A stretch of 64,000 bases of DNA. Source: Phallusia mammillata (Eukaryota). The notes below the pieces were generated by a model, which was not told the DNA's origin, made no database searches, and saw nothing but the letters and a program-made list of their open reading frames with translations. The first letter of the stretch is position 1; each line of letters starts with the position of its first letter. The stretch covers positions 11,036,001 to 11,100,000 of the forward strand of contig OZ281498.1 in the NCBI GenBank assembly GCA_965637545.1, in the 5' to 3' direction. Made by a program: the position numbers and the translations under genes. Below are positions 15,227-58,849 of the stretch, piece by piece.

Positions 15227-18119
15227 GTAAGTCGATTTTGTAGTTATTCGACGTTTTTAACTCAACCAATTGACATACTTACTATCCTCGAGGAAGTCTT
15301 TTTTCTTAAAGTTTTATTTGCTTCTATGCTAGATCTAGCATAAAACTTTAAGAAAAAAGATTTACAAATGCTTGTTTGTGCGGAAAAATTTCAGTTGGTT
15401 AATGGATTTAGTGCAAAATAAGTAAATTTTTGATTCATATCTTAATGTAAGGTGTTGCGTGCTTTGTTTCTACACGTACATACTGCTATACTGAAAACGG
15501 AACCCTTGGTATTGCTTGAAACATCGAATACACATTTTTGTTCTTTCGTTAATGAACTTAACAAAATCAAGGTTTGTTTGGGATTTGAACCCGCGCCTGC
15601 TGAAGTATGTGAGGCAATTGGTCTGTAACTGAAACACACATTTCAGACATGCGATCAAACCTAGGTTCAGTGTTCCAGACAGTCTTGTATTTTAATCCAT
15701 ATTTCCGATACTGTTTGAAAACAAATTTCATGAATCTAAAGTCCAAACGTTTTATTCTTACCTCGAGTTAACGCCTTGGCTAAAATACTTGAGTCTATCA
15801 GTTTGCTTGTCCACAAGACGTCGCAATGGAGCACACTTCAGGTAAGTTCACTTGTAAGACCAAACAAAATCTCATCTGTACGCTCACTTCGAGTCTTTAG
15901 TTCGAACCCCATGAAAGACAATTCAAACACCAAAGACGAATGTATTTAAACTTTTTTAGTCTTCGTTCCTGTCTGTGTTGGATTGTTGCACATTTACGTA
16001 ACCTTTCTGTTTCCGTTTGGCCGATAACGATCTTTTTGATGTTACTATCCACGTGTTGTAGGTTGAAAATTTAGGAATGCTGAATCTTTCTTAAATCAAC
16101 TTGGGACACAATGTGTTCGGAAAAGTACTGCTATTTACATTTTGCACTGTTGCAACATCTGTTGTGTGTATTGTCAATAATAATTTATAATTCTGGGGCA
16201 TCTTACTGCAGAAGACATGTGCGTAATTACATGATTGTTGCATTGTCTGTCAGATTTATGCTAACGCCTTAGTTCAGATTTTGCTAAAATTTTGCCAAAG
16301 GTAAGTATGTCCTTCTGCGTGAATATGTAGAAGCAGACGTTCCGCTGAATAAGGTGCAGTGGCAAAGTGCGTGAAATGAAATGTAAGCCTCGGTCTTACT
16401 CGAGATTTTCTGCACCCTACACATTATGTCTATTTCGTTTTTCGTTTTTTTTTGGCCAAACACAACGTGTGTTTCAAACTGGGTATGTAGTTTGCAGTCT
16501 TACCTGCTTTGTCTTGTTAGATCATCACGTGTATTGTTTTGCAACGGGTCATTCGCGTATTTGTCTTCAGCAAACAGCACGGGACAGAAAAGTAAACAAT
16601 GTGCCGCTGCCGTTTGTAGCGAACGACTACTGCAAAACACATTTGCGGCGAAAGCTTAGAATTGTTCTGTATTGTAGTAAGTGGTAGCGTGGCATTTGTT
16701 ATGCTTATGATGCATACAGTCTTTGTTATGGTTAAGCTCGAAGTGGAAGGCTTTCCGATTCTTTATTTTTAATCTTTTGCACGTGATAAAAATCGCCTTT
16801 TGGGGGCAAATAACGCATTGACGTTGTAGTTGCTTGCATTATGTTGACTCAAAATGTCATATCTGTATCAGGTGTTTTTTGTTAAGTAAACTTTACAATT
16901 CGAATTTTCTGTTTTTTGACCCAAAGAATTTGATTTTGGGTTGACAAATTTGAAACGTTTACCAAATGTTCATTAAAAATGCCGCATTTTTGCGATTACT
17001 CGTATTTAAATGTTTTATTGTCCAACAGCTGCAACTATACTAGCGTAAACTGAAGATAGCTTTAAATTGAATTTACATCACTTCCAATTCATATACGTGT
17101 AAAGTGAGATGTCAAATGGATTCGGCTGAGAGAACAAATGCGTTTTGTCGGTTTAAATGCCGGCGCACTGAGCTAGTTTCTTAAAATATGACAGGAACCG
17201 TAGTGCTCAGGATATCGCATACTCTGTACAGTGGAAATGTACACAAAGATAGCTGCTGTTAAACTGATATTGGCTGTAGTTTGTACTGGTTTGTGTTTGT
17301 TAAGATGGAGTTTAGATGAAGTCACTTATAAAACGTTATGTAAACGCATTATAGGGCATTTTATAAAGTCAAAAATTAAACACAAGTTATAGAAACTTTA
17401 TGTAATTAAATGGCTTTGTAACCTTTGGATTTTGTATTGTCAGATTTTTAGATACTGTTCTCCATTAATAAGTAAAACGGCGTTTTTTCTTAACTTTGTA
17501 CAAATTGTATACAGATACGTTCTGCAGAGCGAAACAAAAACAAACATTGTGTTTCCGGCCTAAATTGTCAAAGTAGGCAACTTTTGTTTGAGATTTCTAT
17601 GTTGTTATGGTTGAAACAAAATTTTTTTTTCCGAAACATTGTATAACCAACGGGTGGTATTAAATACATTGGCAGAAAGTAAAGGCTTTAAAATCGGAAT
17701 TCTATTTTTACCCTATTTAATAAACCATGTCAACAGAAGTGTAAAGCGTAAACAGCCGAAATGAAGTAAAACAATTATAAGTTTGGCATTTTTTATTGGA
17801 ATTTTAATTCTTTTATTCTTAGAAAAACTGCCGATACCATTAGCTGATTAAGAACCATTTTTGGTAGAGTTTATACCACTGCGCATGGAATTGTTGTTTT
17901 ATGTTCGGAACTTGTCAGACTTCAATAAATAACATATGAGGTGCGCTTCGTTAAAACGTTATAGGACACTACGATTGTAGCGTTCCTTGCCACAACAGCA
18001 AACTAAAGTTAAGCAGATGCAAGTAAAAGCGACATTTCTAAGCTTATTGGTCGTGAACCAGTATCGTCTGGTGTCGTTATATGTTCAACATTTGTCACAG
18101 ACTTGCATGCTAAGACCGA

Positions 18120-18330
18120 CTGCCGCCTGCACGCGTGCATCATCACGTGACCTCCCCCACACCCGGTCCGCCGCCGGCTGGTCGATCACGTGATCGCGTT
18201 GCGTGGAAACCCAAACACACTGGAGGCGAATCTGATTTCCCGTGCGGCCACATTGCATGTTGAGGCACGTTCACATTGTCACGTAAGCACAACGTCACAA
18301 TGAAGCACATGGCCGTGCACGTGTGAAGTA
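18120..18330. promoter_or_regulatory. GC-rich intronic island with clustered E-boxes (TCACGTGA twice, CACGTG)
   Basis: TCACGTGA at 18143 and 18186; 12-bp palindromes TGCACGCGTGCA (18128) and GATCACGTGATC (18184); GC locally high against the flanks. Confidence 0.45.
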
Positions 18331-18529
18331 TGATGTTTATGTTTCACACTTTATTGGGGTGCTTGTTTTGCCGATTTATTGTGTTTCTTGGCGGCAAATA
18401 CGAACATTCCTGTGCAATCGGCGACGATTTGCGTACAATGACTCGAATATTTGTGTCATGTTCTTGAAAGAATACGCGTGTGTTTAACTTTTCCACTTTT
18501 TCTTAGTTTTGTTTGGTTTAAACTCTTGG

Positions 18530-18545
18530 TCGCTAGATGGCGCTG
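18530..18545 (+). promoter_or_regulatory. CTCF-like motif
   Basis: TCGCTAGATGGCGCTG resembles the CTCF core (CCASYAGRKGGCRS); motif match only. Confidence 0.35.
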
Positions 18546-21500
18546 CGAAGCTGGATTAGTAACTTTTTTACCCACTAAAGTTTGCGTTAAGACAAGCTTT
18601 GTATTTACGTAATGACAGTAATTTATAATTTCGGGCAAAGGCTTTTTTATTGAGTTATATGCCTGACAATCACTTAGCAAAGTGCGTCTTACTGGTCTTT
18701 ATATCTGAGCAATGGAAGGGATTTCTTCTATCGCCTTATTAAAAGAAATGTGGTCGAAGAATTGAATGATGTGTTTGACTTCAAATAGTGCTGGCGACTA
18801 CTGTAAATGTTAAAGGTCTCGTTGTCTTGTTTGCTCACTACATATGTAGGTGTATGTGCCATGTGCGTAACACTACTGAGATATGAAAAACAATACAGTT
18901 TTAGTGGTCAACCGTTTAATGTTTGAGTGAGGAATGTGTGAGTGATCAATTGGAACTTTGTTTTATCTTGGTGTTGCTAGAATATGGCTGATAGCTTTTT
19001 CCAGATTGCAGTCCTTAGATATGAAACAAGTTAGAACTCAGGCTCAGGCAACGAATGTACTTACAGTTGAGTTGAGATAACATTGCACCGGTTTAAAAAT
19101 ACCTAAAGAGACAATTCCATGAAGGTTTGTTAGTAAGAAAATGGGTCGAAATGATATTGATTGCGAGATAAATAAATAGAGTAGTTTGCAACTCCAATAT
19201 TTTGTGATAATGTGGAAACGACGTCTTGAAAGGATTCAGTGTTTCCCTTTCCATTCCACCTCCACTCCTCATCTATAGACAAAATGTTTTCCGTAAACAC
19301 TGGAAAATTAAGGGAGGCGGCATTTCCGTCAGTAAACAGACTAAGATGCGCAAAGCGGGTATAGAAGGTAAATTTTATGGAAATGAATTTTCCGTTCAGT
19401 TGGGCCATGTGATTCCCACAACGGATTTACTTTTGTCGTGATTGGATAGTCTTTGCTGACAAATGTATTGATGCCAACCTTTCGTAGAAATTAATCTGTA
19501 CTCTATATCTTAAACATAAATTGTTGATTAGCTTGAACTATAAATTGTAAAAATGATTTGCATATTGCGCTGTGTGTTTATCTAAGCTGCAACTTTTTTT
19601 CAATGGTTTATATTTAGCGGCATTTGTTCAAAGAGTATTTGCGAATCGTTAATCATTTCCTGTTTTGTTGTCAACGATTGTGCAGAGAAACTAAAATCAA
19701 TAAGGTTTTATTGAACCTTTTTGCCAAGCAAAAGCGTTTAGAGATTTTTGGAGCATTGATCATCAACCAACTGTCTGGTTTCAGGGCATATTGCTACTTT
19801 CATTTTCAGTGTTGAACGGCTGAAATGGTTGTGTGATTCTTGAAAGGCAATCAAGGGACGTGCATAAAGATACTGAAGTGGCAATATCTCTTTACAAGTA
19901 CCAGACTTATATAGACAACGTACCTCTTTGTAAACCTCAAATCGAAAACAACACTGGGTTCGAAATGAACACAAAATGGTTTAGCTTTCGGATATTTCGA
20001 CAGATTAACGCAGTCATGTCATAACATATTCTTACAACAATCTTATTAAAACGTGATATTAGGCATTTAATATTACCTAAACTTTGTCATAGCACGGTAT
20101 ACGAATGTAGCAATAGATTTGCACCAGCATTGCAACACGCTTATGCAATGCTGCAATACAAACGGAAGAGGAATTGACTAACGCAGAGCTTGTGTTGTTA
20201 CAAAACAATACATCTCTATGCGAGCTGCATCCTATTGCCAACTTTGTCCTTTGAATGACCCCGAAACTTAACCCCGCAAAACCGATCATATGTTTCACAT
20301 CCACTCGAGTTCTGTGCTTTCTACATGCGCCGAACCGTTGTGAACAGACTGGCTAGGAAATCGAACATCCTTTTCTATGCGAGGGCAACTAAATGGGCAA
20401 CAGTTCATGCAATGTGATGCTTTGCTTGGCGGAGGGGGTAATGTATAAAGTTCAAACCATCGATTACTGGAAATCTGCTAGGTTTATTAGAAAAAGCTCA
20501 AACATTTTGTGATTTCTGTTGCGATTTCATAGTGAAGAGTTTACCTCAGTAACATTATATTCGATAGTTATGCACATCTATTTAACATATGAAATTTGCA
20601 ATTGCGTATTTAGTTCCCAGTTTTTCCCGCTTTAGTTCCCTCCTTTAGCGTTTTGCCACTCTTACCAAATTTACCAATTTAAGCTAAAATCCAGCAATAT
20701 TTGTTTGTTGGAACGTTTGTTGTGCTTTATTGCGTATTTTTTTATTTATGTCCATTACATTACTGTGACAAACAGTAATAAATTTAAATAACATATGACA
20801 AAACCTTCATTTATTTCGATTCAATGGCGCTACTGAAGAAGTTTAAAAAAGTTAAAACGTTAAAAACTGTCCACTGTGACAAATGGTTCCACTTCTCTAT
20901 TTCCACATCGTTTCGAACATTTACGTCAATCGGTGTGACTCATTGCATGTGGTTGCAATTGTTGGCTGAAGTCAGCTTGTTGCTAAAACAAATCCCTTTT
21001 TAGCATGTAATGATAAGAATTTGGGGTAGAACGTGCCGACGGATGCCGTTGACCATCTCGTGGTTTGTTCAAATTCATTTTCTTACTCATTTTGGATTCT
21101 ACTTGTGGGATGTTTTCGATTTTCAGTCTATGTTTGAATGGCTAATAACATTGTTATTAGGGAAATAAGCTATTCCTGCGAGGCATAATGTACAAATAGA
21201 TATTGCTCTTCTAGCAATATTTATTATATTATATATTATTATTAAATAGCAATACAATGAAATCCCAAAGTGCCTAATCCGAGTAATGCCACTCTTATGG
21301 ACATGACCTCGCAATTGGACAGATAATGATTCGTTATGACGTAGTGGTTTGGGGGACTCTAATTGGTTAAATGTTTTGCGACTGTGAATTGATAGGAAAC
21401 CTGGCAGGAAAGCGACTAAAGTCAATGGACTTTTCGAGTTTCGCGTCTACATCCCGGCTAGTTTACCGAAAACGTTTACCAGAGAGTTTGTTAGATGCTT

Positions 21501-24089
21501 ACGTGTTTTCAAATAAATTGTGTGATATTGAATCAGTCAACTTTGAGTCGGAAGCGCATAGAGTAATAAAGAGGTGCTTTATGATCTGATTTTCTGGGTG
21601 TTCTTTGCAGCGCGATTATGCGGAAAAACAATTTTACAGGATACGAATTCTTTGCCTGACTTGTAATTATGTTTTCTTTGTCTGAGTAAATGTAAGTTCT
21701 AATGTTGATAGTATATTTCAAAAAATATTTTTCGAGCAAAAAATGGCACTTTAAATCTCAATGATACGAGTGCTGTTGGATTTTGGCAAAAACAATTCAT
21801 TACGTTATTCCTCTAACATGGTGGTCGTCCATTAGTCACTTTTATTTCAAACCTAATCCTGACTCCCTTGTGTAAAGAGTTGTTGATTGACGTGTAAAGC
21901 TTCATCAGGAGTTTTTTGTTAAAAGTTGTTGAATGATTCCGGCTTCAGTCCCCTTGGCAACAGAATGAATTAATATTGATTATCACACGATAATAAGTAT
22001 AATGGAGAAGACGTTAGTACTGGTAGTCGTACAGACATGAGTTTTATTTCTTGTGGGCGAGCAAGCGAAAATTGAAAGCTAACTATTGAAGTAAATATAA
22101 AAAGTGGTAAACATTTATACTTATCAGTGCATCAGTATTAAAACGTCTCAAAAACATAATTTTGTTCTTTGTTGTTGGATAAGGTTGATAATATATCTAC
22201 ATTGGAATCATTGTACGTTTGTGGGAATACATTTATCATGTGTGTATATTTCAATAATTTTTTTGGAAATGATAAAACAACTAAGTATCAGGTAGACCCT
22301 GTAATCTTATATACCTGGGTTAATGGTTTGATTTCTTTACCTACCAATTTACCACTCACAATAGTAACCTAATACTTTGATTGTTATCATAGCAGATAGG
22401 TTGTGAAATAGTATGACTCTTCATGGAAAGGCTGTAGCTAGTGTAAAATTGTCTTAGTAATCCGAACCTGGGAATAACATGGTTAATAGTTTTAGACAAG
22501 CAATAGTTTTTTGGTTGTAATACAGTTTTAGAGGCTTTTAAAGGTACATTTGGGCCAAATATTACATACTTTACCAGATATGTTATACATGAACTTTGTC
22601 AAAGTATATTATAGAACAAAGATAAACCCCATTTTATTGAACGAAAGTGTCAAGAGTTTGTGTTAACCTGTCATCAACAAGTACGATGTTTTTCCACGGT
22701 ACCTTGTTACCTTATTAAACTTTGTTGCGTCACAAACACATTTCTATCTGTCTGTCGCAAATAGGATGTGGCAACCGCTAACATGACGTTTGTGATGTCT
22801 CACCGGAAATAAGCACGTGATCTCAGGGGTTAATATTTCGCGCTGAACGTTTGGCGCCAAAATTCACTGAAGCTAAAAGTAAACTGGGTCGGCGGGGTCA
22901 GCGCCTATGTAATTTCTAAAGTTGCTCTGTTATAGAGCTCCTACGTAGAAGCGTTTGCACGATAGAAGTTATGTAAAATGTGTCATACTTCTAGGAACTG
23001 CTTGCAACCCGTCCATAGAAGTCACATGTTTTAATAGAAATCATATGACGGACCTTTAGATGTGATTAGTTGTTTCAGCGAAAATTTTGATAGCTTGTTA
23101 ATTAAGTGACTTTATTTCGCAAGTTACTGGGTCTAAAGGTTGGTTGGTGGTGTAACATGGGTGATGTTATGACTCGTCTGTATAAACAGGGCACAAAAAT
23201 AATTTCAACATTTCACGGAAAACAGACGGAATCTAAATTTCTCTTCGCAATAATTTTAGAAAGTCGACCCGTTTCGTTTCAAACTTTTTTAAACTCTCGA
23301 AAACATTTGTATGGACCTAAATCCAGGGATTTAACAAAACTTGCGAAAATATTTGTGAAATGGTATTGATTGCTGTTATCGATTTAACACCCTGCTATGC
23401 ATGCTGGAAAAACAAGTGATTACTCTTTATACTCTAGACCTGCACTCTGAAAAAGAGATTATGAGATGTTTTTTTATACATTTGTTGTTAATTTTGTTCA
23501 ACTGAAAGTGACAATAGCGAATGTAGGATCATCCGATGACCCCTGCTATAACTGACTTGTGTTTTTTCTGCTTAGAAAACATACACTGTTTCTGAAACAA
23601 TACTATTCTCTTACGCCACATATGGATAAAACCACAAGTATAACGCGGCTATAACTACCAACAAGAAGGTGTAATTAAGATTTATCCCGTATTTGATGCT
23701 TTTCATTTTCAAGTTGTTTTCAATTTACCTGTACACACCTGTAGAAAACTTAATTAGCTGTAAGCAACTCAACAACACACGTAGGTTGAAAGCTTGAGCG
23801 CTGCGTCAAACTTGTGTGGGTAGCCCAGCTATAAAACGGGCCACTTGTAAACAATTAAACCGTTCCAAAACTTCACAGGCAAGATAATTATCGCCCTGTG
23901 ATGTCATAATTACATATTATGACGCGACAATCAACGATCTTCGAATGCACATGATACGAAATTAACTTCGGTGCTTTTCGTGTTAGGTATGCGAGAACTT
24001 GAAAAAAAAACGTTTTAGGCTGTATATCAAGAATGTAGATTTTATGTTTTGCTTTGCGTTGGCATAGTCGGTCGTTGGATGCTTTAGAA

Positions 24090-24313
24090 CAGAGGTCGGC
24101 AACCTTTTTTGCACTGCGGAACGTTTTTGAAACTGAAATTTTATCTCGGACTGGCCTTGAAAAAAAAAAACTACGAATATATAGCAATAAAGACGCTTAA
24201 ATTAGATTATCTTCCCCGGAATGCACGGGGAAAACGTTTCAAAGCATTTAACCTGAAAATTATACGGCCCGGCGGTAACGAACTTTTTGCGGATTGGCGG
24301 TTGCCAACCACTG
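24090..24313. mobile_element. hAT (Charlie-like) MITE, 224 bp
   Basis: Imperfect TIR CAGAGGTCGGCAACC / GGTTGCCAACCACTG; 8-bp TSD CTTTAGAA / CTTTAGGA (1 mismatch). Confidence 0.8.
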
Positions 24314-32955: not shown

Positions 32956-32968
32956 GTTGCTTAGCAAC
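32956..32968. promoter_or_regulatory. RFX X-box-like palindrome
   Basis: GTTGCTTAGCAAC, upstream of the putative promoter of exon B. Confidence 0.4.
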
Positions 32969-33329
32969 AGGTTAACCTTTCCTCTGTGATGTAATAACCT
33001 TCCCTCTGTGACGTAGGAATGCTGGATTTTGTATGGGAATTTCCGTACAATCGAATACCGTATCAGTTGCACCAGGAGACCATTTGAAATTGTAACGTAT
33101 GCCCGCTATAGGTCAATTTGGCAATACTGAATATAAAAAATGCACGTTTATTAGAACTCACCAAAATACCAAAATCAACGTTTTGCAAAATTAAGCAAAG
33201 TAGATGGATATAAAACTACAAACATAAAGTATTTTTGATTTTATGGTCGCAATGTAGGGGCTTACCCGCGGAGCGTTATATACCAATCGCGTCCATTCAA
33301 ACTTCATTTGTTCAGCTGAACCCCGAAGC

Positions 33330-33554
33330 ACATGACGTCACAATTAGCATTGTTCCGTCACAGCACGCATGGTGACGCAACGATAGGGGAGATGTTGGTG
33401 GAGTGGTGGTTGCGGCCATCTATTGCGTGTTCAAATTTCCGGTCAGCTGTTTCAGCTTACTGATCGACTGAGGCTTGGGAATTTGAGTTAGAACATTTCC
33501 TTGTTGACGTGTAGCGGGATATATTTTGTTATTTTTTGTGCTGCAGCATGTAAG
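33330..33554 (+). promoter_or_regulatory. Putative internal promoter / 5'UTR exon for isoform B
   Basis: TGACGTCA at 33333, GC-richer patch, candidate donors at 33550 (gtaagg) and 33555 (gtacag), followed by acceptors at 33752-33839. Confidence 0.4.
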
Positions 33555-45200: not shown

Positions 45201-45354
45201 TGTGAGCGCGGTACGCGGTTTCTTTACGAACCAGCCCATCATCCTTTTGTTTGTTTTCGCAGGATTGTAATTTGTTGTTATAAGTGATTTCGAGTTTCAG
45301 GTAGTGCGTTTAAAACTGCAAAACGTGAGCGAGTTTAAAAAATATTGTGATAAA

Positions 45355-45425
45355 ATGCCCGAAAGGAAATGGTTGGATACGATGCGCCCTCCAGCGTTAA
45401 GAATTAAAAAATCGCGGGCCGACAG
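45355..45425 (+). CDS. Alternative first coding exon C, MPERKWLDTMRPPALRIKKSRAD
   Basis: ATG in aaaATG context; strong donor AG|gtaagg, phase 2, 160 bp upstream of exon 45586; upstream acceptor ttttcgcAG at 45262 and TGACGTCA at 45136. Confidence 0.7.
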
Positions 45426-45585
45426 GTAAGGTTTAAATTGACCTATCAAAGTTCTGCATTTCAACACGTGGCCTTATTGCATTACCAAGGGTTTCGTTTT
45501 CAATGTTTTCCTGTAGAATATTATATTTGTGTTTCAACCTGTTGCAAATTATAGATTTTAATTTTTGTGTTTTTCTGTATTTTAG

Positions 45586-45618
45586 GTGTGATGCTCCACT
45601 AACACTGAAAACGGCTCG
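45586..45618 (+). CDS. LIM domain microexon (33 nt), CDAPLTLKTA
   Basis: Long T-rich acceptor ending tttAG, donor CG|gtaagt, phase 2-2; supplies the sixth LIM ligand with the correct C-x2-C spacing. Confidence 0.85.
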
Positions 45619-48574: not shown

Positions 48575-48587
48575 GTTGCTAAGTAAC
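48575..48587. promoter_or_regulatory. RFX X-box-like element
   Basis: GTTGCTAAGTAAC, ending 47 bp before the ATG of exon D. Confidence 0.4.
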
Positions 48588-48633
48588 AGAAGCGTTAAAC
48601 TTGTAAACTTCAATTCTCGAACGAAAGAAACCC

Positions 48634-48989
48634 ATGAAAACTTTCCGAAGATTGTCGGTGCGTCATAGTGCTGATGACGTCATCGATCAAAGAAAACAGG
48701 ATGCGCCGGTTCCAGGCCGTTTGTCCCTGAAGGCCGAACTGCGAGCGTCTTTCTCGTCTCTGCCGAGCGCCAAAGGTCTGCAGCGTCGCCGGGCAGCTAC
48801 GGAAATATTGCGACCTCCGAAATCAAGCCCAGATTCGAACCGTCGCTGGTCGCCCATTAGTGGATTACTAGCGACATCGAGTGGCAATAGTTTTTGGACA
48901 CCTTCACCCCCTAGGCGGCGACTTGGCATGAAAAAGCGAAGACACCCGAGTGATGCAGCTACGAGTACAAAATGCGACTCAGATTCAAG
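48634..48989 (+). CDS. Alternative first coding exon D (118 aa, basic and Ser-rich)
   Basis: ATG-initiated GC-rich ORF MKTFRRLSVRHS...; donor AG|gtatta at 48990, phase 2, in frame with exons 58031 and 58850. Confidence 0.7.
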
Positions 48990-51900
48990 GTATTAAGTAG
49001 GAAGTGTGTTTATGTTTATTTACTGTCCAAATGTCCATGCTAGCAGTCATTAGAGCATACCTTTTGTACTTTATTGAATGTGAAAAAAAACCTAGCTAAA
49101 AATGGCGCACAAAGTTACCTTTAGCTCCTTTGCTTTCATAGCTTAAAGAAACATTGAAAGCACTTGTGTTAAACAAACGTGCAAATATATGAAAACTTTT
49201 CTGCAAAAAGGTAGAAGAGTAATTCGACAACAAGCAGCAGTACATTCAACTTGGTTTAAGCAATGTACACCGCACATATATTTAAGTTCATATCCTTCAA
49301 GAAAACAAACAACAAAAATAAACGTGAGCTTAGAGGCCCAGCTGGGCATTACAGCGTTATTCGTTTGCAATGGTAAAACCTACCCTAAAACAAACATGGC
49401 TGGTTGAAATCGGCGACATCAAACAACCCAATAGCAAATGTGTGTGCTAACTTGTTTCATGCCCGGATGGTTTGTTGCGTTAGTAGCGCATCAAGTGGCA
49501 AAGATGTAAAACACCGTGGCCGTACATTTACAAACAGTCCCTGCCTAATGAATCTGCACTTCTTGTTCAGGTGTATTATGTGGTCTTTAAACGGATCCCT
49601 TCAGTTTAAAGCAGCGGTTTTGAATCAGGGTTTTGCAATTATAACCTAATTACTAGCAATTGCTATATTGTATTCTGCACAAAGTTTCAAGGCAGATGTA
49701 AATGCAACCAAATGCAGATAAAGCAAGAAGTTTTGAACTAGAAAGAGAAATGTCCTCGTGAAATACAGTCTTGTTTTTCTTCAAATTTCTAGGCTTGTTA
49801 GTCACAGTGGTGGTACAAAAAAAAACTAAGTAGAGAAATTCAGATCACAGAGTCAAACAGTTTTACCACAAAGTCAAACAGTTTTCAACAGTTCCACTGC
49901 CGCATTATTTCCTGATGGCGTTGGCTCGTGTTGCGGAAGTACTTGAAAGCTATGAGCACTTGTGACCGATTTTATTTTTCTGTTGATTTCGTAATCTGCA
50001 GGCAACAGACTTTTGTTCTTCGAATAATTTAGTTCCTCAGTCCGGACGGGAAATAAAAAGGAAGCACCTGCATTCAGCTTTGATGTGAAAGCGCCCTTTA
50101 TGCAGTTCAACTGTTTTTGTAGCGAAAGTTGAAATTTTTGAAGCGCTAGGCCACGGGGTGAATGTGTGGCGTTTTGTTACATGAGATTTGGTCTGTATTC
50201 GGATTGGTAATTGGCAATTTAGGATCTCATCAAACGTCGTTGAAGCCTTCTATCCCAGTAGAAAGTTTCTGCATCTTACGAAACGTCCTCGAAACGATGT
50301 CAGTTCTTGTCAAAAGATGTCATTCACAACGGGAGTATCTGGGTTTTCTATGCTGGATGGATCGTGGAAACCTAAGGAATGAATAAACATTCCAAGTCGG
50401 ATAAAAAACATCGCAGAAAACGGCTTTCAAAACAATGTCGAGGATTAACGTAGGCCACTGTCACGAGCATTAGTGAAGCTATTTTTCGTCTAGTTTTTAA
50501 CCTTCCTTGATATTCATCCATTTCTCGGTAAAGCAAGGTTTACTGATCGCACGTATTTTTCGGTGTTGTTGCTGCAAACAACAACAACAGGCAGTTGAGG
50601 CTATGACTTGATTGATGTGAATAGCAACTTCCCGCTAGGATGACAGGGTGCGTATCATATTAATGCAGCAAACTGCACGTTTTGCCTCATCCTTAACTTT
50701 GTGTTAGAAGAGGCGAATAAAGAAAGTCTATTGTCTCAAAGGAGCTAATGTTCTCAACTTGTGTTTTAACAACGGCATCGTGTTCTTATCCGTTGCCAAA
50801 AACAAAGCTTTTTAATGTCAAAATTAAATGGGAGGCCTCTAGGACATTGTTTTTAACGTAAGACAAGGTTGAATTGGTTTTAGAACTGTAACTCGTTCTA
50901 TAAGAGGTTAAGTTAAACTCTTCTCTTCCAGTTTGTAGGCGTTTCCCAAGGATGACGTACCGAGGTGTTCGTAGGACAATGCTTGCGTCTGTAATTAGCT
51001 TATGTTTTTTGGATGTCTTGATGTGAAATGACGTGAATAGCTAGAGTTGAGCTTTATCTCATTGAGTTCTACAGCTTTGGTGTAATAGAAATAAGGCGAA
51101 ATGTTTTAAGTTTAGTTGATAAGTGTTGAAAATCGAAGTAATCTTTTGACAATAATGAAGGCTGAAAGCTGCTGAAAAAGCATCAGCTGTTTACACGTTT
51201 CTCTTTCAAAATAGTGCAGTACGGGCAATTGAGCGTTTATTTATTTATTTTTAATGCAAAGCGACTTGTATCTGCTGCTCCTACCTGAAGGAAATTTCAG
51301 TTTAAAAATCAATTGATCGATAAAACACGAGTTAAAGAGAGTACCCATTGCATGTTCCCTTGCGTCGCCTAGTGATGTGAGTTCATCTGCTTAACATCGA
51401 TCTGCAACCGTTAAACCGATTTTTTGCAATTTCAAGTAATTGGCTTTTAAGCGGGATTTAATGGTGCTGGAATTAGGGAAACAATTTTAAAAATCTCTGT
51501 CATATAGCTACGCTTCGGACGTGGCCAGCAGTACACATATCTACTCTCCAAAATCTCATCTCGATTTTAAGCAGCCTAGCCCCACTTGTATGACGTCATG
51601 TGCTAATCGATGCGCTCCAATGCTCTTTGGTCAGGTGAACTCCATCGATCTGCTCGTGATGCCATGTTCTGGTCGCTGATTGCGACGTCTTTTCAAAAAT
51701 TGTATTTTCCCAGGGCGTTGCAACAATCATTGCATGATTAACATAAAGTGTGTTATAGTGGCTATGGACCAATCAATATTGGCCGGCACCAAACACCAAC
51801 TGAAAAGCAGATAGCATTCTGCGTGCTCGTGGGATTATTGAGTCAGTTTGTGCGTTTGCTTCATTGTGTGTTTCAAGTTATGCGAGTATGGTTAAGTGTT

Positions 51901-52566
51901 TTCAAGTTCGGGATTGGTAGCAGTTGGACAAAGGGCAATCAGTAAACTTTGTCACTAATTGGTGGCTCATTTTTATTTACGTATTATTCAGACAGAACAG
52001 TAATATTTAATATTTTTTTTCTAAATTTTAAGTTTTACATTACAAAAAAGTTTCAAAACTTGTTAAGAGACAATGTACTAGCAAAAGGCAAGTAAAATGA
52101 ACGATTTGTTTAGTTTTCTGTCGTAGGGCCGTGAATAATGGTTTAGCACCGCAATGAGTTAAGGCGTTTAGCATTTAATCCAGCTTTTTTAAAGATTTAT
52201 ACAGAAATTACTCCCATCTATGTAAAAACACATTGGACAATAAGCAGCCATTTGCGTATGCGCACGCAGCACAATAAATCGAACACCCTCTGCGTGCATT
52301 TCGAAACTGTTGACCATATAACGCGTTTGCATGTTTACAAAATCAATTCTAAGTCCGATCTTGGCATTAATGAGTCAGTGAATAGATTCAACGACACCTC
52401 ATGATTCACCCATGTCGCAAATTTAAAGCAGAATAATATGTCAATGACGCATGAGTTGTTCTTTATTCGTTGCTGGTGCGCTTTAAAGGCAGTTTGCAGG
52501 TTTAATATTGTTGTTGTTTGTTCGGCTATGGGAGTTAATCCTTTTGAAAATAAACTTTATTGCGAT

Positions 52567-52710
52567 GGTATTCCCCAGGGTTCCATCCTAACCCCATTTA
52601 ATGCCTTGCTTGTGCGTAAGCAGAAAACTTTATAGAAGCTGTTGTTATTTTAACAGCTGCATTATCAGTGTGGAGTTTTAGGAAACGGCGCGCCAGTTTT
52701 ATTATATGCA
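52567..52710 (+). mobile_element. Possible decayed non-LTR retrotransposon RT fragment
   Basis: One frame reads GIPQGSILTP...(two stops)...GVLGNGAPVLLYA, resembling LINE RT motifs G(V/I)PQGSxLxP and LLYADD at plausible spacing; the catalytic DD is absent. Confidence 0.35.
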
Positions 52711-53547
52711 CTGAACCGTATTTAACCGTGAGGTTTTGCAGAATGTTTTTGTACGCTTTTTAGTCTGGATTTAATTGAATTTTTACAACTTAGCTACACA
52801 TAATTGAAAATACAACATTTATCAAAAATCGTCCCCTTTTTAGTGCGCATTTTGGCAAGTCCGTTTTCGTAAATAGCTTTTAACATGGTCACGTGCAAAT
52901 ATTGAAAGTATTAAAATATGCATGACATGTGTGGCACTGAGTAGTTCAAGTAACAGATAGAATACATCACCAGCAGATGGTGTTTGACGATTGCTGAAAG
53001 CACTTGAGAGAACGTGTAGCGCTGAACAACGCTGGTGGATGTGTGTATTGATTTTACCGCGTAAATTATGCCAAGTTACCTCGATTTTAGACAATCAGTT
53101 CCCTACCTACCTAACCGATGTCCGTTATTCACCTGATGTCACCACACAGCAGAACGTCCCGTTTTTTCTCGGTCTATTCATCACACTCGTTTAGCGAAAA
53201 AGGCCAGCCACAGCTCTGTTGATGTTACACCATTTAGTTGGTGTCGTTTAAGTTGAAGCAGTGCAACAACTATTGGCTGTGATGCAATTTAGTGCTGGCT
53301 GTTCAGGAGTTGGCTATTTTACACTGGTTGTTCGCTCAAGAAGGAATTTGGAAACACTTGCATTACGGAAACATTTTATTTTAACCACATCTTATGTGAA
53401 ATTTTATGACGAAATATTGCAACTATTGTATCACAAACCCTCTCTTTCTTTGTTTACAAGTTTTTATCCTCAGTGAACTTGAGCAGTTAGGTTTCAGAAA
53501 ACAAATTTTGCAATCAATTCGAACCACAACAAAAGCTTGCAGGCATT

Positions 53548-53642
53548 ATGATGTCATACCGCGATCCTTCGTACCTCGCAGCCTCTCTCTCATCCGACGA
53601 AGATGACGATGACGTCATCTACCTTCCGGCGCTGACAGCAAG
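53548..53642 (+). CDS. Alternative first coding exon E, MMSYRDPSYLAASLSSDEDDDDVIYLPALTA
   Basis: ATG at 53548, perfect donor AG|gtaagt at 53643, phase 2, open frame. Confidence 0.7.
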
Positions 53643-56600
53643 GTAAGTGACGTTACAGGGCGAAACAGCGTGTGATGGCGACTGTATGATTGTGTGTGTG
53701 TTTGTATGTTTTAGTGTGTACCGTTATGGTCGTGAGACCTTCTACAACAGGTTGTTTAAACACCTGAGGCTTGAAGGCGTGCAGTTGCAAGTTTCAATAG
53801 ACCACATGCTTCCTGAGCAAATGTCCCAATGGTGATGTGTGTATTGCTTTTTCCGGCCTTGATTTTGTGTATTGCTTCGTAGATAAATCATGATCCAGTT
53901 CGCAATTGATACTTAACAAGGCGCCAAAACTGGCAGCGCTAGGCATTAAACATCCAAAAGTGGACAATATAAATTGAACTATTGCCCAACCGCGCAGCTG
54001 CTGAATAAAAAAAATCACCATTTTAAAATCTGCCATTTCTCCATGACGTAACAAAGCGCCGGCGCCGCATGCTTTAAAATCGATTCGACACTGAATTTTG
54101 TACGTGCACAAATCGACTACGTTCAAAGCACAATATTTCGTCACAATGAGTGTTCACGCGTCGTGTTATGAGGTCATTTTGTTTGATTGAAAGCCAGTTC
54201 ACGGATGGAAGTTGTTTGTGCGCGTATTTGTGCAAAAGGAAGCTGATAGTGTTCCGCAGTTATATTTCCTTCTCGGGAACATCCCATGCTAGCTGCTGTC
54301 AGTTCGCACCTGAACGATTTATAACCTGACCGGTACAAAAAACATCATTAAGCGTTTAGTTAATTTATATCCAAATCTCTACCAAGTTACAGTATTTTAT
54401 TGCAAACATTTAACCACTACTGCTTTTGTTATATGCTGGAAAAGCAATTCGACATTTACAACAAAATCACTGTTGTAATAATGTTTAAAACAAGCAGTTA
54501 CCCTACCCCTGCGCCTTTTACTCGTAACTTTCAAAATTTTATAAAAAAAATAAATTAATGTGGGAAAAAATATGTGTTGTGCATCATATTTGGTCACCCC
54601 TTATCGAAATGTCACACAGGTGGTCAATTAATCGTTTGGTGGTGCCATGACTTGAAAAAATCTAACACTCAGCCACATGTGGCGCTGAAGAGCCCTACTC
54701 GAATACGTCCATTGTTCACCTACATAGTTGTGATTGTGACGTATGAGTTGAATGTGCAGAGGCGATGGTGTGTTCCGCGTTGGCTTTTATTTCCGACTAG
54801 TTTTAAAAAAAACTATTTAGACATCCAGTCTCGCCACTGTAAACAGTTTTAACAGTTATTTGAAGAACCCAGGCTAGCAACAAAGTTTCTTTTGACTTAA
54901 GTAAAGAAAAAGAACGCGTTTATTGTCACGTCGCAGTCTTCTATTGTGTAAAGCAGCTTCAAACAACATTTTATATTCAAATGTGGCGGAAAGCAACATA
55001 AGAAGTGGTAGACTGTGACGTTATACCCAGCCGTTACGTCACAATGCGATGTGACTTCCTTCCGCTAACACATTCGAGTAGCACGATGTGATTTTTTGTC
55101 ACATTATGACAGCAGTCACGGTTAAAACTGAGAGCATAGTTTATTTTGTTTTGTGCACAGTTGTGGTGATCAATCAAAAGAAAGTACTAAAGTTAGTGAA
55201 GATTTTGTTGGTCAAAGATGATTTTGAAACATGTTAAAAATTATTGGTTTTATTTCAAAAGTTCTTAAAGTTTTTCTTCAAAGCCAACTTAACCATTATG
55301 ATGGAAAACTAAACTCAAATTAAAATCTACATCTTCGTGACGTATCTTCAGTATCAGTGTGAAGAAAGAGGTTTGAAAAATTATCGCAAAAATGTTAAGA
55401 ATGAGCATTCTGTGAGAGGCATGTAAAATTCCAATTTAAATTGCCCATACGTTTTTGTGTACCCCAATATCGACAATAGTTATTAAATCGCCCCATGCGC
55501 CTTATTAAAATCACGTCATGAACGGACATAAGGGGCAAAGGAAGGTTTTAATTTCCCTCGCGATTTTCTTGTTTGGTCGCTCGCCTTACCTGCGCCTTTT
55601 TCGCGCTATGGTGTCAAACTACGCACCTCAGCGGGCTGTGACATCACACTGTGCATTGTGACGTAACAAAAGTGCCCATAGTCACGCATCTGGGAGCGTG
55701 TAGAATAGAAAGGTACCGAGATTAAAGTGTTGCCTTTTGGAAAATGTCGCAAATTTAGTGTTTTTTTTAGGTTTGTTAAAGAGGTTTAATGTTATATAGA
55801 TGCAAATTTGCTAAATAAGAGAATAAAAAAGCTGCAGAAACTAAACTTTTTGATGCAAGGCCCCATCAAGATCAAAGCGAATCCGCCAAACGTCAGTTAA
55901 ACAAAATTAATTCTGCAAATTGAAATTAATTTTGAATCGACCATATTATCGAAGCTTATTTAATGCAAACAGATTTACGTTGAACCTTTATGTCCCTGTT
56001 TGACCCCTTGCAATCTCTTTGATGAAACCATCCCGCTAAGACTGTTCAGGCCCTTTTTTCTTATTTGCCCTTCTTGGCCCTCACGCCGCAAGCAATACCA
56101 AACACATGAACTTTTGCTCGTCAATAATTGACTTCTAGTATAGTTTATTTACGTTTCCCAACGCCGAGCAAATGTATGTTCGATCTTGTTTGCTCTAAGT
56201 GTTCACGTGAGACTCGTGTTTTCCAAGAAACTTGTGTTATTTTTGCCCAGACCCCCGATAAGGAAGTTTGAAAAAGTGGGATTGGTTCGTACCAGGACAG
56301 TTTTGCTTAAAAGCTGAGATTACCCGGTAGACAGTTTTAGAAACAAGGAAATAGGTTGGTTCAGAAATTTTCAATTTGGTGTTTTTGCTGTAAACAGGCA
56401 GACAGCTTAAAAATAGTAAGGAAAGTAAAGACATGAGTGTCAAGAAATTACTAGTGACACATACAGAAAATGTAAAAAAAATATATAGAAAACTTTGCAG
56501 TGATTAATGAAAGGCTATTTTATTTGATTAGTAGTTTTTGTTATGACCTAAAAGCTGGTTTAGAAACTTGCAAGACCGTTAGTTGTTGTTTTAAGTGCAT

Positions 56601-58030
56601 CAGACTGGTAACAGCTTTGGCGCTAATCAATAGTAGGAAACAACCGTGTTTGTCAATAGTAGATTCTTCCAATGTATTTTCTCTGCTAAATTTAGCAATT
56701 ACAGTCCCAAACAACAAAACAGCACCTAATTATATTTGACAATTCCCTTTGTTACGTCATAATTCGCCTATAGACTCATTGAGAATTCGCAACAATGGTT
56801 GTAACAATTCAATACCGGACGGGGGGCCTGTACTCAAGCACGTGCTTTATATTCCAGCTTAATCCGATACTGCAAATGTTTCGGCGCGACGTGTTGGTTT
56901 AGCTCGCTTGTGTATTTTGTAATCTGACCCCCAACTTATGTTATATGTAGGCTTTAACAAATTTAATCATGCTTACAGTACCTACGCCTCATAATCGTGG
57001 TCAAAACTTTCTTGTGTTTTCTTTTTGCGATTGAACATTTTTGGGTAAAAAAATACTGATGAATGGTTTTGTAGTCAATACCCACAAAAAAGGACGAAAT
57101 ATAAACCACAAGTAAACATCACCTATTGGCGTCTTTTGTAAAGTTAAGTTGGTTTGGAAAGTCAAACAAAAGTTAACGTACTTTGTCTGGTAACCTTTCC
57201 CGCTGTCACACTTGGTACGTCACTACGTTGGCTTTGTGACGTCACATTGAAAAAATATTTGTCTTGGACAACAACTTGAATGGTATAAGGGCTTTATTCA
57301 AAATTACTGTGCAAAATGCTTGATAGATTATTAAAACGCTTTTGCTTTTATGTTGATCAATAACATCGCGGAACATGCAACCGTTTCCGCATAATAAACA
57401 GTATGACGTCACAAACGCTAAATTGTGCCGCAATTGGTTATCGACCGATGAAATGTCGGTTTATTGCATGTCGCCGCATTCGTGCCAGCAAATTAATTCC
57501 AAAGTCATAATCTGAACAACAATCAGCTTCAGCTTATCGACCGGGAAAAGCAAAAGCTTAAAGCTAAAACATTCTAGGTTTACCCGGCCTGGAATTGTTT
57601 TTTGTTGTTATTAAATTCCCGTTGGTCGGTATGACTAAGGACACCTGGTGCGTTATAATCCGTCCATTCGTTATGACATCACAATAGATCCATTGTGATT
57701 CGATACACAAAGTGGAATGCGTTTTTTCTGTTAAGATGTTTTTGGAAAAAAGAATAGTCGTTTAAGTAAAGTTTGGTGAAAAACGTTTTTTACCGGCCCA
57801 GCATTCGTGTCAAATAAATTGGTCGAAGCATTTGTACTATATTCTGTGATACATAAAGTGTTCGCTGTGCGTTTTGCTTAATGATGTTGAAAATGCAGGT
57901 TTTTGAGTAACACATGAGTTATGTTTAGGAAAAAGTGTGAATGGTTTGGTGTATGAGTGCATAAAGGGTGTGTGTCAGAAGCTGTTTCGCCCTGTCACAT
58001 AAAACAACCCAACCATTGATGGTTGTTCAG

Positions 58031-58498
58031 TGCCGGAGCAGAAGACCAGGAAGATATCCCTTTTCCATTCTCTCCGACCATTCATTGGCCGATTCCAAGC
58101 GCAAAATCACGAAAGCTTGTGTCTCGGGCGAGCACAGAAAGCCTTGGAAATTTTTCTGCCCCTTCTGGTGAGAGCGAAGCAGCTTTCCACTTCCATCAGA
58201 GTCATGGAGTTCGCAGGATTCGAAGTCTAGGACCCGGAGATAAAACGCAAGTGGGTCGTCTCCGTCAAAGACGCGCGGCGGTCTCAGCAGCGACCTCTAT
58301 CGACCAGCCTGGTGTGAATGAATCGACTCTTGAAGAGGGAATAGCGATAGATCAGTTTGGAATGCCGATGAAGAAGAACACGATGCGGATAACCGCTCGA
58401 TTCATAGGTTCCCTGCAGAAGCATTCGGCGCAAAAGTCAAAGGCTGAGAGGGTGGCAAAGGCTGCTGCACTTGCTACTTACCTGAGCAACCCTAGAAG
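58031..58498 (+). CDS. Alternative coding exon F (468 nt, phase 2-2)
   Basis: 159-codon ORF preceded by an in-frame stop at 58017. Acceptor ttgttcAG ends at 58030; donor AG|gtagcg at 58499; in frame with exon 58850. First in-frame ATG only at 58362. Confidence 0.6.
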
Positions 58499-58849
58499 GT
58501 AGCGACCAAAAATGAGGTTTTGTTAACCACAAGTTGGCGCCCGTGCGCATTGGAAAGGTTATAGGTCTTATAGATAGCAAAATCACTTGTCTGAAAAGTC
58601 ATACTACCTTTCACAAATGTCTAGGTGTTGAATGACAACACATTGTTGAAAAAAAAACAGTCTTGTAAAACCATTTAAAATTGTCTGAGGGTTATTTCAC
58701 ACTACACACTCATACAAAATAATTTATACTTTGGAACACAATGTGTGTTCACTTCGATCCTTCAACGGGTTTTGCATTAAACTTGTCAGTTACGTTTGAT
58801 TGTGGTTTACGTATTTCTGAACTAATATCTCAAACATTTACTTCTACAG

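What the first reader, a model, noticed from the sequence alone, without database searches (positions are those of the whole stretch)
15227..58849. N-terminal swapping array built inside a split LIM domain
The LIM domain is cut by two phase-2 introns of 30,359 and 13,231 bp. Exons B (33928) and C (45355) lie in the first intron; D (48634), E (53548) and F (58031) lie in the second. All five are unrelated in sequence, yet every one ends in a phase-2 donor in frame with the next LIM exon. B and C isoforms would keep three of the eight zinc ligands; D, E and F isoforms would keep two. Only upstream promoters would give an intact LIM. This resembles a variable-first-exon / constant-region array where promoter choice sets localisation and regulation of one GAP.
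Basis: inference. Interest (0 to 1): 0.8.

Follow-up and report, generated by a model that had tools for sequence, protein, structure and literature searches.

The report
Alternative N-terminal exons inside split LIM
A sea-squirt Rap1GAP gene really does carry five alternative N-terminal coding exons inside the two long introns that cut its LIM domain. The layout is conserved across ascidians, but it is a tidy case of ordinary alternative 5' exon use, not a new kind of system.

Summary
The window holds about 70% of a roughly 91-kb Phallusia mammillata Rap1GAP gene with LIM, GoLoco and RapGAP domains. Its LIM domain is coded by 15098-15226, 45586-45618 and 58850-58910, split by phase-2 introns of 30,359 and 13,231 bp.

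- **B:** a Phallusia cDNA-derived protein joins B to the micro-exon and then to LIM3.
- **E and F:** RNA-run contigs show E 53642>58031 F and F 58498>58850 LIM3.
- **F:** it is an internal 2-2 exon without its own ATG. It is also used as a 5' exon after spliced-leader trans-splicing at 57929.
- **C and D:** no RNA evidence here. Both sit in the same order in Ciona and Clavelina, with ATG, open frame and phase-2 donor kept.
- **Conservation:** B, C, D and F are the only protein-level conserved islands an unbiased scan found in these introns. E was found by direct search.

Upstream starts give the intact LIM. Further alternative first exons lie outside the LIM (5311, a candidate at 61951), so the array is gene-wide. 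Promoter choice and any effect on localisation remain inference. RefSeq already models the LIM and B-type isoforms. The scan also noted this same stretch as s1-388489, not on other DNA.

The parts
15098..15226 (+). LIM exon A. It codes zinc ligands 1-5 (C-x2-C-x19-H-x2-C-x2-C) and has a phase-2 donor AA|GTAAGT.
   Evidence: Sequence read. Matches P0017 residues 494-536 at 100%. Orthologous exons lie in Ciona L004 20613-20762 and Clavelina L005 19298-19426.
15227..45585 (+). First LIM-splitting intron, 30,359 bp, phase 2. It holds exons B and C.
33928..34901 (+). Exon B: an alternative first coding exon of 324 codons plus 2 nt, Ser/Arg-rich, with donor AAAAG|GTATTT in phase 2.
   Evidence: UniRef A0A6F9DRA6 (P0001) is 100% identical over B and continues into the micro-exon and LIM3. 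B-type isoforms are modelled in Ciona (X4, X5) and Clavelina (X5, X6), E 1e-46 to 1e-48. Styela X7-X9 also lack the LIM and join a long Ser-rich N-terminus to the micro-exon, but BLAST found no similarity to B.
45355..45425 (+). Exon C: an alternative first coding exon, ATG plus 71 nt (MPERKWLDTMRPP...), with donor CAG|GTAAGG in phase 2, 160 nt upstream of the micro-exon.
   Evidence: No RNA evidence here. It is conserved just upstream of the micro-exon in Ciona (L004 33464-33534, E 2.8e-5) and Clavelina (L005 31411-31481, E 5e-6). ATG, length (71 nt) and GTAAG phase-2 donor are identical in all three. A Styela-like Logan transcript (L007/P0141) joins a short first exon directly to the micro-exon.
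45586..45618 (+). Constitutive 33-nt LIM micro-exon (CDAPLTLKTA plus a split Arg). It carries zinc ligand 6 and is phase 2 on both sides.
   Evidence: Present in P0001 and P0017. Its letters appear as the loose end before 58850 in all four runs.
45619..58849 (+). Second LIM-splitting intron, 13,231 bp, phase 2. It holds exons D, E and F.
48634..48989 (+). Exon D: an alternative first coding exon of 118 codons plus 2 nt, with donor TCAAG|GTATTA in phase 2. Its conserved core is WSPISGLLATS..G..WTPSPPRRR.G.
   Evidence: No RNA evidence here. Syntenic orthologues lie in Ciona (L004 35318-35691, E 4e-15) and Clavelina (L005 32728-33059, E 9.5e-15), each with an ATG and a phase-2 donor near the end of the ORF.
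53548..53642 (+). Exon E: an alternative first coding exon of 31 codons plus 2 nt, with an acidic DDDDVIYLPALT motif and donor AAG|GTAAGT in phase 2. It splices to F.
   Evidence: Joint 53642>58031 (GT..AG) in run X1. Conserved with ATG and phase-2 GTAAGT/GTAGGT donor in Ciona, Clavelina and contig L006. An E+F-type transcript protein, P0022, exists in the L006 organism.
57927..58030 (+). Spliced-leader trans-splice acceptor (AG at 57927-57928) and the 5' extension of F (57929-58030) used when F is the 5'-most exon.
   Evidence: In X5 the loose letters before 57927 end in ATTCTATTTGAATA, which together with the genomic AG gives the 16-nt ascidian spliced leader (PMC1488885). The leader plus GT occurs 3179 times in this genome against 0 for the control. 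X6 and X9 contigs run from 57897/57898 through F to LIM3.
58031..58498 (+). Exon F: a 468-nt symmetric (phase 2-2) internal exon with no ATG of its own. Conserved motifs are RLR.RR.AVS and a C-terminal KNT.RITARFIGSLQKHS...AAALAT.L helix-like stretch.
   Evidence: Joint 58498>58850 in X1, X6 and X9, from three studies. Orthologues in Clavelina (E 5e-24) and L006, and in the older Ciona models P0014 and P0016, where it sits between the micro-exon and LIM3.
58850..58910 (+). LIM exon 3 (KESDGGVLCDPCSDDASNDK). It carries zinc ligands 7-8, with a phase-2 acceptor and a phase-0 donor.
59472..59507 (+). GoLoco exon 1 (ADDLIAMLEKMQ). It is optional: LIM3 joins either this exon or 63369.
   Evidence: Loose ends behind 58910/58911, pattern match, sequence.
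61951..62010 (+). Candidate further alternative first exon 'G' (MRRVRKYSRSFRSAVKYPNT). Its phase-0 donor is in frame with GoLoco exon 2.
   Evidence: Conserved island with Ciona L004 at about 42780-42834. The frame was checked. There is no RNA evidence.
62658..62720 (+). GoLoco exon 2 (ATRMDEQRCSLRLPVPTNDNQ).
63369..63602 (+). First exon of the conserved Rap1GAP core (PDAPTPLYPSINEVL...HFVGK). The Rap_GAP domain follows 1.3-3 kb past the window end.
5311..6039 (+). Upstream alternative first coding exon (coiled-coil-like ORF) that leads into the intact LIM. It lies outside the finding's range but belongs to the same array. Its 3' end was not fixed here: 6039 is the end of the conserved match, not a mapped donor.
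   Evidence: Orthologous N-termini in Ciona isoform X3 (P0015), Clavelina X4 (P0148) and Styela X6 (P0137).

Best explanation
The locus is the Rap1GAP gene of the ascidian Phallusia mammillata. It spans about 91 kb and codes an optional LIM, an optional GoLoco motif and the RapGAP core.

Its 5' half carries a series of mutually exclusive N-terminal coding exons. Starts far upstream (C5:11015333) or at window 5311 read through exon A, the 33-nt micro-exon and LIM3, and give an intact LIM domain.

Five further exons lie in the two phase-2 introns that cut the LIM. B and C each have their own ATG and splice to the micro-exon. D and E each have their own ATG. E splices to F, and F splices to LIM3. 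D is expected to splice to LIM3 or F. F is also used as the 5'-most exon after spliced-leader trans-splicing at 57929.

Both LIM introns are phase 2, so every inserted exon must end in phase 2 (and F must also begin in phase 2) to keep the frame. That is what is seen, and it is conserved.

The result is a family of proteins with one catalytic core and either a LIM domain or one of several unrelated, motif-rich and probably disordered N-termini. A non-functional LIM remnant (three or two cysteines) is carried along because those exons are constitutive.

Shown: exon structure, the junctions for A, B, E and F, and conservation of all five exons. Inferred: the C and D junctions, separate promoters, and that the N-termini set where and when Rap1 is switched off.
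For: - Identity of the gene: Rap_GAP exons lie 1.3-3 kb past the window end, and there is no RhoGAP nearby. P0017, a Phallusia mammillata protein, maps exon by exon at 95-100% for most exons. Pfam finds LIM at 505-560 (29.5 bits), GoLoco, Rap-GAP_dimer and Rap_GAP (212 bits).
- B isoform: P0001 reads B, then the micro-exon, then LIM3, and has no Pfam LIM.
- RNA-run contigs from three studies: joints 53642>58031 (X1) and 58498>58850 (X1, X6, X9), micro-exon letters before 58850 in all four runs, and the spliced leader at 57927.
- Conservation: the order A-B-C-micro-D-E-F-LIM3 recurs in the genomic loci of Ciona (L004) and Clavelina (L005), with ATGs, open frames and phase-2 donors kept. Micro-E-F-LIM3 recurs in a fourth, AT-rich tunicate-like contig (L006).
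- An unbiased scan of all open fragments of the window against L004 and L005 finds only B, C, D and F as conserved islands inside the two introns. E is too short for that scan and was found by direct search.
- RefSeq models in Ciona, Clavelina and Styela hold both LIM isoforms and LIM-less isoforms that start inside the first LIM intron (B-type in Ciona and Clavelina).
Against: - No RNA junction was seen for C>45586 or for D>58850/58031.
- The E>F joint rests on one contig in one run (X1). That run also covers introns.
- Contigs cannot show transcript starts, so separate promoters are unproven. The only clear 5' end is a trans-spliced one.
- P0001 reads on into the intron after 58910, so that record may be an incompletely processed RNA.
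- The current Ciona assembly holds only the last 17 codons of F.
- No functional data exist for any N-terminus.
Confidence: 0.8

Rival explanations
1. C and D are conserved for another reason and are not N-terminal exons of the Rap1GAP. They could be small independent ORFs, parts of another transcript, or regulatory elements that happen to be open.
For: Neither junction was seen in RNA, and no database protein starts with C or D. The pattern of a short ATG-ORF plus a phase-2 donor occurs by chance at about the observed rate.
Against: - In three species both keep an ATG, an open frame and a phase-2 donor.
- C has exactly the same length and a GTAAG donor, and lies within about 350 nt upstream of the micro-exon, in all three.
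- Conservation is at the amino-acid level in one frame (D: E 4e-15 and 9.5e-15).
- A Styela-like transcript joins a short first exon to the micro-exon.
Confidence: 0.1
2. B-F are cassette or poison exons included in transcripts from the upstream promoters. On this reading they interrupt or end the LIM reading frame and are not alternative first exons.
For: - F is an internal exon with an acceptor. Older Ciona models place it between the micro-exon and LIM3, which splits the LIM (P0014, P0016).
- No transcript start was mapped for B-E.
Against: - B, C, D and E each begin with a conserved ATG.
- P0001 and the RefSeq B-type models start at B's ATG.
- P0022 starts at E's ATG.
- F is seen with a spliced leader at its 5' end.
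Confidence: 0.08
3. The ORFs are chance open frames in long introns, or are single-exon genes read to their own stops.
For: Several ORFs of 90-135 aa elsewhere in the window look like noise.
Against: - Junctions for B, E and F end exactly at the predicted donors.
- All five are conserved in order across ascidian orders.
Confidence: 0.02

Closest known systems
Vertebrate RAP1GAP / RAP1GAP2 (GoLoco plus RapGAP, many N-terminal isoforms)
   Same: The catalytic core and dimer domain are 48-51% identical over the best-aligned core, and the GoLoco motif is optional. There is one catalytic region with many alternative N-termini: 32 distinct N-terminal 12-mers among 106 mostly vertebrate protein clusters.
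   Different: No LIM domain was seen in any listed vertebrate protein. None of the ascidian exons B-F or G matches a vertebrate N-terminus.
Orthologous ascidian loci already in RefSeq: Ciona intestinalis LOC100183188, Clavelina lepadiformis LOC143449350, Styela clava LOC120327908
   Same: It is the same gene, with the same LIM-GoLoco-RapGAP architecture. LIM isoforms and LIM-less isoforms starting inside the first LIM intron are modelled as X1-X9. The exon order is the same.
   Different: The entries are named 'uncharacterized protein'. C-, D- and E-first isoforms are not among the models found. Two full-text searches found no paper on this architecture.
Variable-first-exon / constant-region arrays (clustered protocadherins, UGT1A)
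   Same: Several alternative 5' coding exons, each with its own start codon, are spliced to shared downstream exons.
   Different: - The variable exons are not paralogues.
- They use three different acceptors (45586, 58031, 58850).
- One of them, F, is internal and trans-spliced.
- A promoter for each exon is not shown.
LIMK2 isoforms (from my memory, not checked here): alternative first exons that leave a truncated first LIM domain
   Same: An alternative 5' exon enters within a LIM domain, so one isoform has a whole LIM and another has a partial one.
   Different: That case has two alternatives, not five or more. It is a kinase, not a GAP, and has no trans-splicing.
Ascidian spliced-leader trans-splicing (Satou et al. 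2006, PMC1488885)
   Same: The canonical 16-nt leader ATTCTATTTGAATAAG is joined at an AG acceptor 102 nt upstream of F's cis-acceptor.
   Different: Here the trans-splice site lies deep inside a gene and creates an N-terminally different isoform. It does not simply cap the gene's first exon.

Membership tests
LIM domain (PF00412) | Match to the Pfam LIM model above its gathering score. | tested here: met
   P0017 residues 505-560 score 29.5 bits against a cut-off of 22.9. P0001 (the B isoform) has no match. Ciona P0014, with F inserted, scores only 20.2 bits for the first 40 positions.
LIM domain (PF00412) | Eight zinc ligands spaced C-x2-C-x16-23-H-x2-C-x2-C-x2-C-x16-21-C-x2-C/H/D. | tested here: met
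   The spliced A + micro-exon + LIM3 sequence reads C-x2-C-x19-H-x2-C-x2-C-x2-C-x18-C-x2-C. The regex matches every LIM isoform and no B-, E- or F-type isoform.
LIM domain (PF00412) | Binds two zinc ions and folds as two zinc fingers. | not testable with these tools
   Needs protein chemistry.
Rap1GAP family | Rap_GAP catalytic domain plus the Rap-GAP dimerisation domain. | tested here: met
   PF02145 at 212 bits and PF21022 at 96.5 bits in P0017. The exons lie at C5:11101320-11102990.
Rap1GAP family | The catalytic asparagine in the RKRHIGND stretch. Its role is from my memory of the Rap1GAP structure work. | tested here: met
   P0017 reads LQRKRHIGNDIVAIVF. GAP activity itself was not tested.
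Rap1GAP family | GoLoco motif N-terminal to the catalytic region. | tested here: met
   PF02188 at 29.5 bits against a cut-off of 25.1, residues 569-590. RNA contigs show that it can be skipped.
Gene with alternative 5' coding exons on a constant region | Mutually exclusive first coding exons joined in frame to shared downstream exons in RNA. | tested here: met
   The A-type (P0017), B-type (P0001), E>F>LIM3 and leader-F>LIM3 forms were all seen. For C and D there is conservation only.
Gene with alternative 5' coding exons on a constant region | Each alternative exon has its own promoter or transcription start. | tested here: inconclusive
   Only contigs were available. One 5' end carries the spliced leader at 57929. 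Two contigs from different studies end at 57897/57898. There are no CAGE data.
Protocadherin / UGT1A-type variable-exon cluster | The variable exons are tandem paralogues. | tested here: not met
   All pairwise BLASTP E-values among B, C, D, E, F, G and the 5311 exon are above 1.
Protocadherin / UGT1A-type variable-exon cluster | All variable exons join one common constant acceptor. | tested here: not met
   Three acceptors are in use: 45586, 58031 and 58850.
Spliced-leader trans-spliced mRNA (ascidian) | The 16-nt leader at the mRNA 5' end is joined at a genomic AG. | tested here: met
   One contig in X5 shows it. The leader sequence is in PMC1488885, and there are 3179 leader+GT copies in this genome.

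The most novel reading that the evidence does not exclude
Choice among the N-termini might be made not only by internal promoters but by alternative spliced-leader trans-splicing of long primary transcripts. Internal acceptors ahead of B, C, D, E and F would then act as a post-transcriptional LIM on/off switch for a Rap1 GAP, kept since the ascidian ancestor. One such internal acceptor, at 57929, is seen here.
Probability: 0.2. Interest if true: 0.5.

Novelty: new member of a known kind. Interest (0 to 1): 0.35.

Why it matters
It gives a checked, exon-level map of how one ascidian Rap1GAP gene produces at least seven or eight N-terminal forms, with or without a LIM domain.

It also shows that three first exons (C, D, E), and possibly a further one (G), are conserved across ascidian orders but missing from the current RefSeq models that the searches returned. 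That is useful for annotation. It also helps anyone studying Rap1 control in Ciona or Phallusia embryos, where exon-specific probes or knock-downs could separate the isoforms.

As biology it is an instance of a common theme: alternative 5' exons on a constant catalytic core, also typical of vertebrate RAP1GAP. The LIM-splitting position is best explained by those two introns being the longest ones available. The phase-2 rule is then simply the frame constraint.

Tried and rejected
- **RhoGAP:** none lies near the window. The GAP is a Rap1GAP.
- **Pfam on B, D, F and the 5311 exon:** no domain found.
- **The look-up of encoding contigs:** P0001 and P0012 are not on record. The Styela locus is too long, so no DNA was returned.
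- **Rfam on the whole window:** no hit, so the transcribed piece at 56090-56401 stays unexplained.
- **Literature:** no paper found on a LIM-Rap1GAP or on this array.
- **LIM plus RapGAP outside tunicates:** none found, but the search is limited to shared exact words.
- **Homology of B-G to vertebrate RAP1GAP N-termini:** none.
- **C or D in the AT-rich contig L006:** none found.
- **D>LIM3 or D>F junction:** not seen among the loose ends of the four runs. Contigs drop rare forms, so this is no evidence of absence.
- **Clavelina B exon:** it ends so as to rebuild C-x2-C with the micro-exon. This is not conserved in Ciona, Phallusia or Styela, so I reject it as a general 'half-LIM completion' idea.

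Full report
**What is there.** The window is G000:C5:11036001-11100000. The genome is that of the ascidian Phallusia mammillata. Two UniRef proteins of that species map onto the window exon by exon, at 95-100% identity for most exons. No RhoGAP lies nearby. Rap_GAP exons lie 1.3-3 kb past the window end. The gene runs from C5:11015333 to about C5:11106725, roughly 91 kb. Its longest known product, P0017 (1257 aa), carries LIM (505-560, 29.5 bits), GoLoco, Rap-GAP_dimer and Rap_GAP (212 bits).

**The observation.** Read directly, the LIM domain is coded by three exons.
- Exon A, 15098-15226, carries five zinc ligands and has a phase-2 donor.
- A 33-nt micro-exon, 45586-45618, carries one Cys and is phase 2 on both sides.
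- LIM3, 58850-58910, carries two Cys.

B (ATG 33928, donor after 34901), C (45355-45425), D (48634-48989) and E (53548-53642) each start with ATG and end in a phase-2 GT donor. F (58031-58498) is different. It has no ATG, it is preceded by an acceptor (ttgttcag|), and it is a 468-nt exon in phase 2 on both sides. The five are unrelated to each other. The pattern alone is not beyond chance for the short exons. ATG-ORFs of 20 or more codons ending in a phase-2 GTRAG donor number 7 in these introns, against 5.9 in shuffles. Other evidence was therefore needed.

**RNA and cDNA evidence.**
- P0001 (UniRef A0A6F9DRA6, 432 aa) is 100% identical to B. It continues ...GKKR|CDAPLTLKTAR|KESDGGVLCDPC..., so B>45586 and 45618>58850 exist in a cDNA-derived record. 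It carries a few polymorphisms relative to this assembly and reads on into the intron after 58910.
- P0017 shows the A>micro-exon>LIM3>GoLoco chain.
- I laid Logan contigs of four runs from three studies on 53400-59000. The joint 53642>58031 (GT..AG) is in X1. The joint 58498>58850 is in X1, X6 and X9. Micro-exon letters form the loose end before 58850 in all four runs.
- Two continuations follow LIM3: to 59472 (GoLoco exon 1) or straight to 63369, which skips the GoLoco exons.
- In X5 the F contig starts at 57927, preceded by letters ending in ATTCTATTTGAATA. With the genomic AG this is the 16-nt ascidian spliced leader (PMC1488885). The leader plus GT occurs 3179 times in this genome and the reversed control 0 times.
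- So F is also a 5' exon made by trans-splicing at 57929. In F's frame a stop lies at 58017-58019. Translation of that form would have to start at the conserved internal Met of ..MPMKKNTMRITARF.., which is inference.
- C and D lie outside the stretch laid, and no D-derived loose end was seen.

**Conservation.** A search with a constant exon, and then with the constant region of the Ciona protein, found the orthologues: Ciona intestinalis LOC100183188, Clavelina lepadiformis LOC143449350 and Styela clava LOC120327908. Each has RefSeq isoforms with a LIM and without one.

I fetched the genomic loci of Ciona (L004) and Clavelina (L005). The Phallusia exon peptides find the following, in the same order:

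| Exon | Ciona L004 | Clavelina L005 |
|---|---|---|
| A | 20613 | 19298 |
| B | 29440 | 26097 |
| C | 33464 (E 2.8e-5) | 31411 (E 5e-6) |
| micro-exon | 33811 | 31651 |
| D | 35318 (E 4e-15) | 32728 (E 9.5e-15) |
| E | 37464 | 34890 |
| F | ends at 41158 | 38249 |
| LIM3 | 41444 | 38840 |

C is ATG plus 71 nt up to a GTAAG phase-2 donor in all three species. D keeps an ATG and a phase-2 donor near the end of its ORF. E keeps an ATG, the DDDDV(I/V)YLPA(L/V)T motif and a phase-2 GTAAGT donor. F keeps phase-2 borders.

A 23%-GC metagenome contig of an unidentified tunicate-like organism (L006) shows micro-exon, E, F, LIM3 and GoLoco in order. A transcript-derived protein of that organism (P0022) starts at E and runs E>F>LIM3. 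A Styela-like Logan transcript (L007) joins a short first exon directly to the micro-exon.

In an unbiased scan of every open fragment of the window against L004 and L005, the only conserved islands inside the two LIM introns are B, C, D and F. E is too short for that scan and was found by direct search. Introns of these distant ascidians do not otherwise align. So C and D are very probably coding exons, although their junctions were not seen.

**How it most likely works.** Because both LIM introns are phase 2, any exon that enters there must end in phase 2 to keep the frame of the constant part. That is the whole of the 'every one ends in a phase-2 donor' regularity.
- Upstream starts give the LIM form. 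These are the far-upstream exon 1 and the 5311 exon, which is the N-terminus of Ciona X3, Clavelina X4 and Styela X6.
- B and C replace everything up to ligand 5. D and E(+F) replace everything up to ligand 6.
- The leftover cysteines are carried along because the micro-exon and LIM3 are constitutive. No Pfam LIM is left.
- The alternative N-termini are Ser/Arg/Pro-rich with short conserved motifs. This fits docking or phosphorylation sites, but it is inference.
- Whether each has its own promoter is open. One 5' end is trans-spliced, and two contigs from different studies end at 57897/57898, which hints at a nearby start. Contigs cannot prove starts.

The array is not confined to the LIM. Besides the upstream starts, a conserved island at 61951-62010 reads ATG plus 20 codons (MRRVRKYSRSFRSAVKYPNT). 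It has a phase-0 GTGAGA donor in frame with GoLoco exon 2 (62658-62720), and the same holds in Ciona. Older Ciona models also use F as a cassette between the micro-exon and LIM3 (P0014, P0016). No such junction was seen in Phallusia.

**Comparison with what is known.** Vertebrate RAP1GAP proteins share the core (48-51% identity over the best-aligned core) and also come with many N-termini: 32 distinct N-terminal 12-mers among 106 mostly vertebrate clusters. They have no LIM and no homology to B-G. LIM plus RapGAP was found only in tunicates, within the limits of word-based searches.

The array differs from protocadherin or UGT1A clusters. The exons are not paralogues and they use three acceptors. 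Two full-text searches found no paper on this architecture. RefSeq already models the LIM and B-type isoforms under 'uncharacterized protein' names.

**Verdict.** It is a well-conserved but ordinary kind of gene organisation.

Noticed in passing
window 61951-62010: A candidate further alternative first exon: ATG plus 20 codons (MRRVRKYSRSFRSAVKYPNT) with a phase-0 GTGAGA donor, in frame with GoLoco exon 2 at 62658. It is conserved in Ciona (L004 at about 42780-42834). Its basic RxxS-rich start recalls the RKRSFTF-type N-termini of vertebrate RAP1GAP isoforms, but no significant match was found.
   Followed up: partly
window 56090-56401: A transcribed piece in runs X1, X5 and X6, lying in the intron between E and F. 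In X6, letters like the end of a template-switch oligo precede 56154, which suggests a capped 5' end. It has no joint to any exon, no Rfam match and no obvious ORF.
   Followed up: partly
window 57927-58030: An internal spliced-leader acceptor lies 102 nt upstream of F's cis-acceptor. The extension holds out-of-frame ATGs (for example 58019), so the leader-F mRNA would carry short upstream ORFs.
   Followed up: partly
window 58910 to 59472 or 63369: The two GoLoco exons (59472-59507, 62658-62720) are skipped in some transcripts. Isoform pairs with and without GoLoco are also modelled in Ciona, Clavelina and Styela.
   Followed up: partly
window 5311-6039: The ORF that another note called ORF1p-like is a conserved alternative first coding exon. 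It forms the N-terminus of Ciona X3, Clavelina X4 and Styela X6. Pfam gives no domain for it, and the LINE ORF1p idea was not tested here.
   Followed up: partly
L004 40900-41160 (Ciona intestinalis AP043567.1): This Ciona assembly holds only the last 17 codons of exon F, although older Ciona RefSeq models (P0014, P0016) contain the whole exon. There are no N runs. This is either a strain deletion or an assembly error.
   Followed up: partly
L005 about 27000 (Clavelina B exon end): The Clavelina B exon ends ..NCYK, so that with the micro-exon it rebuilds a C-x2-C pair. This is not so in Phallusia, Ciona or Styela.
   Followed up: no
G000:C3:11108338-11147465: A tandem array of spliced-leader RNA genes with a 553-bp period. 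The genome holds 3179 exact copies of the leader plus GT.
   Followed up: no
L006 (ENA ERZ17174903 contig, 23% GC): An unidentified, very AT-rich eukaryote in a metagenome carries the same micro-exon, E, F, LIM3, GoLoco layout. Its LIM-type (P0023) and E+F-type (P0022) proteins come from JGI contigs of about 3 kb.
   Followed up: partly
window 58911-59138: The cDNA-derived record P0001 reads through the LIM3 donor into the intron and ends there. This is either a retained intron or an alternative 3' end giving a 432-aa product without a GAP domain.
   Followed up: no
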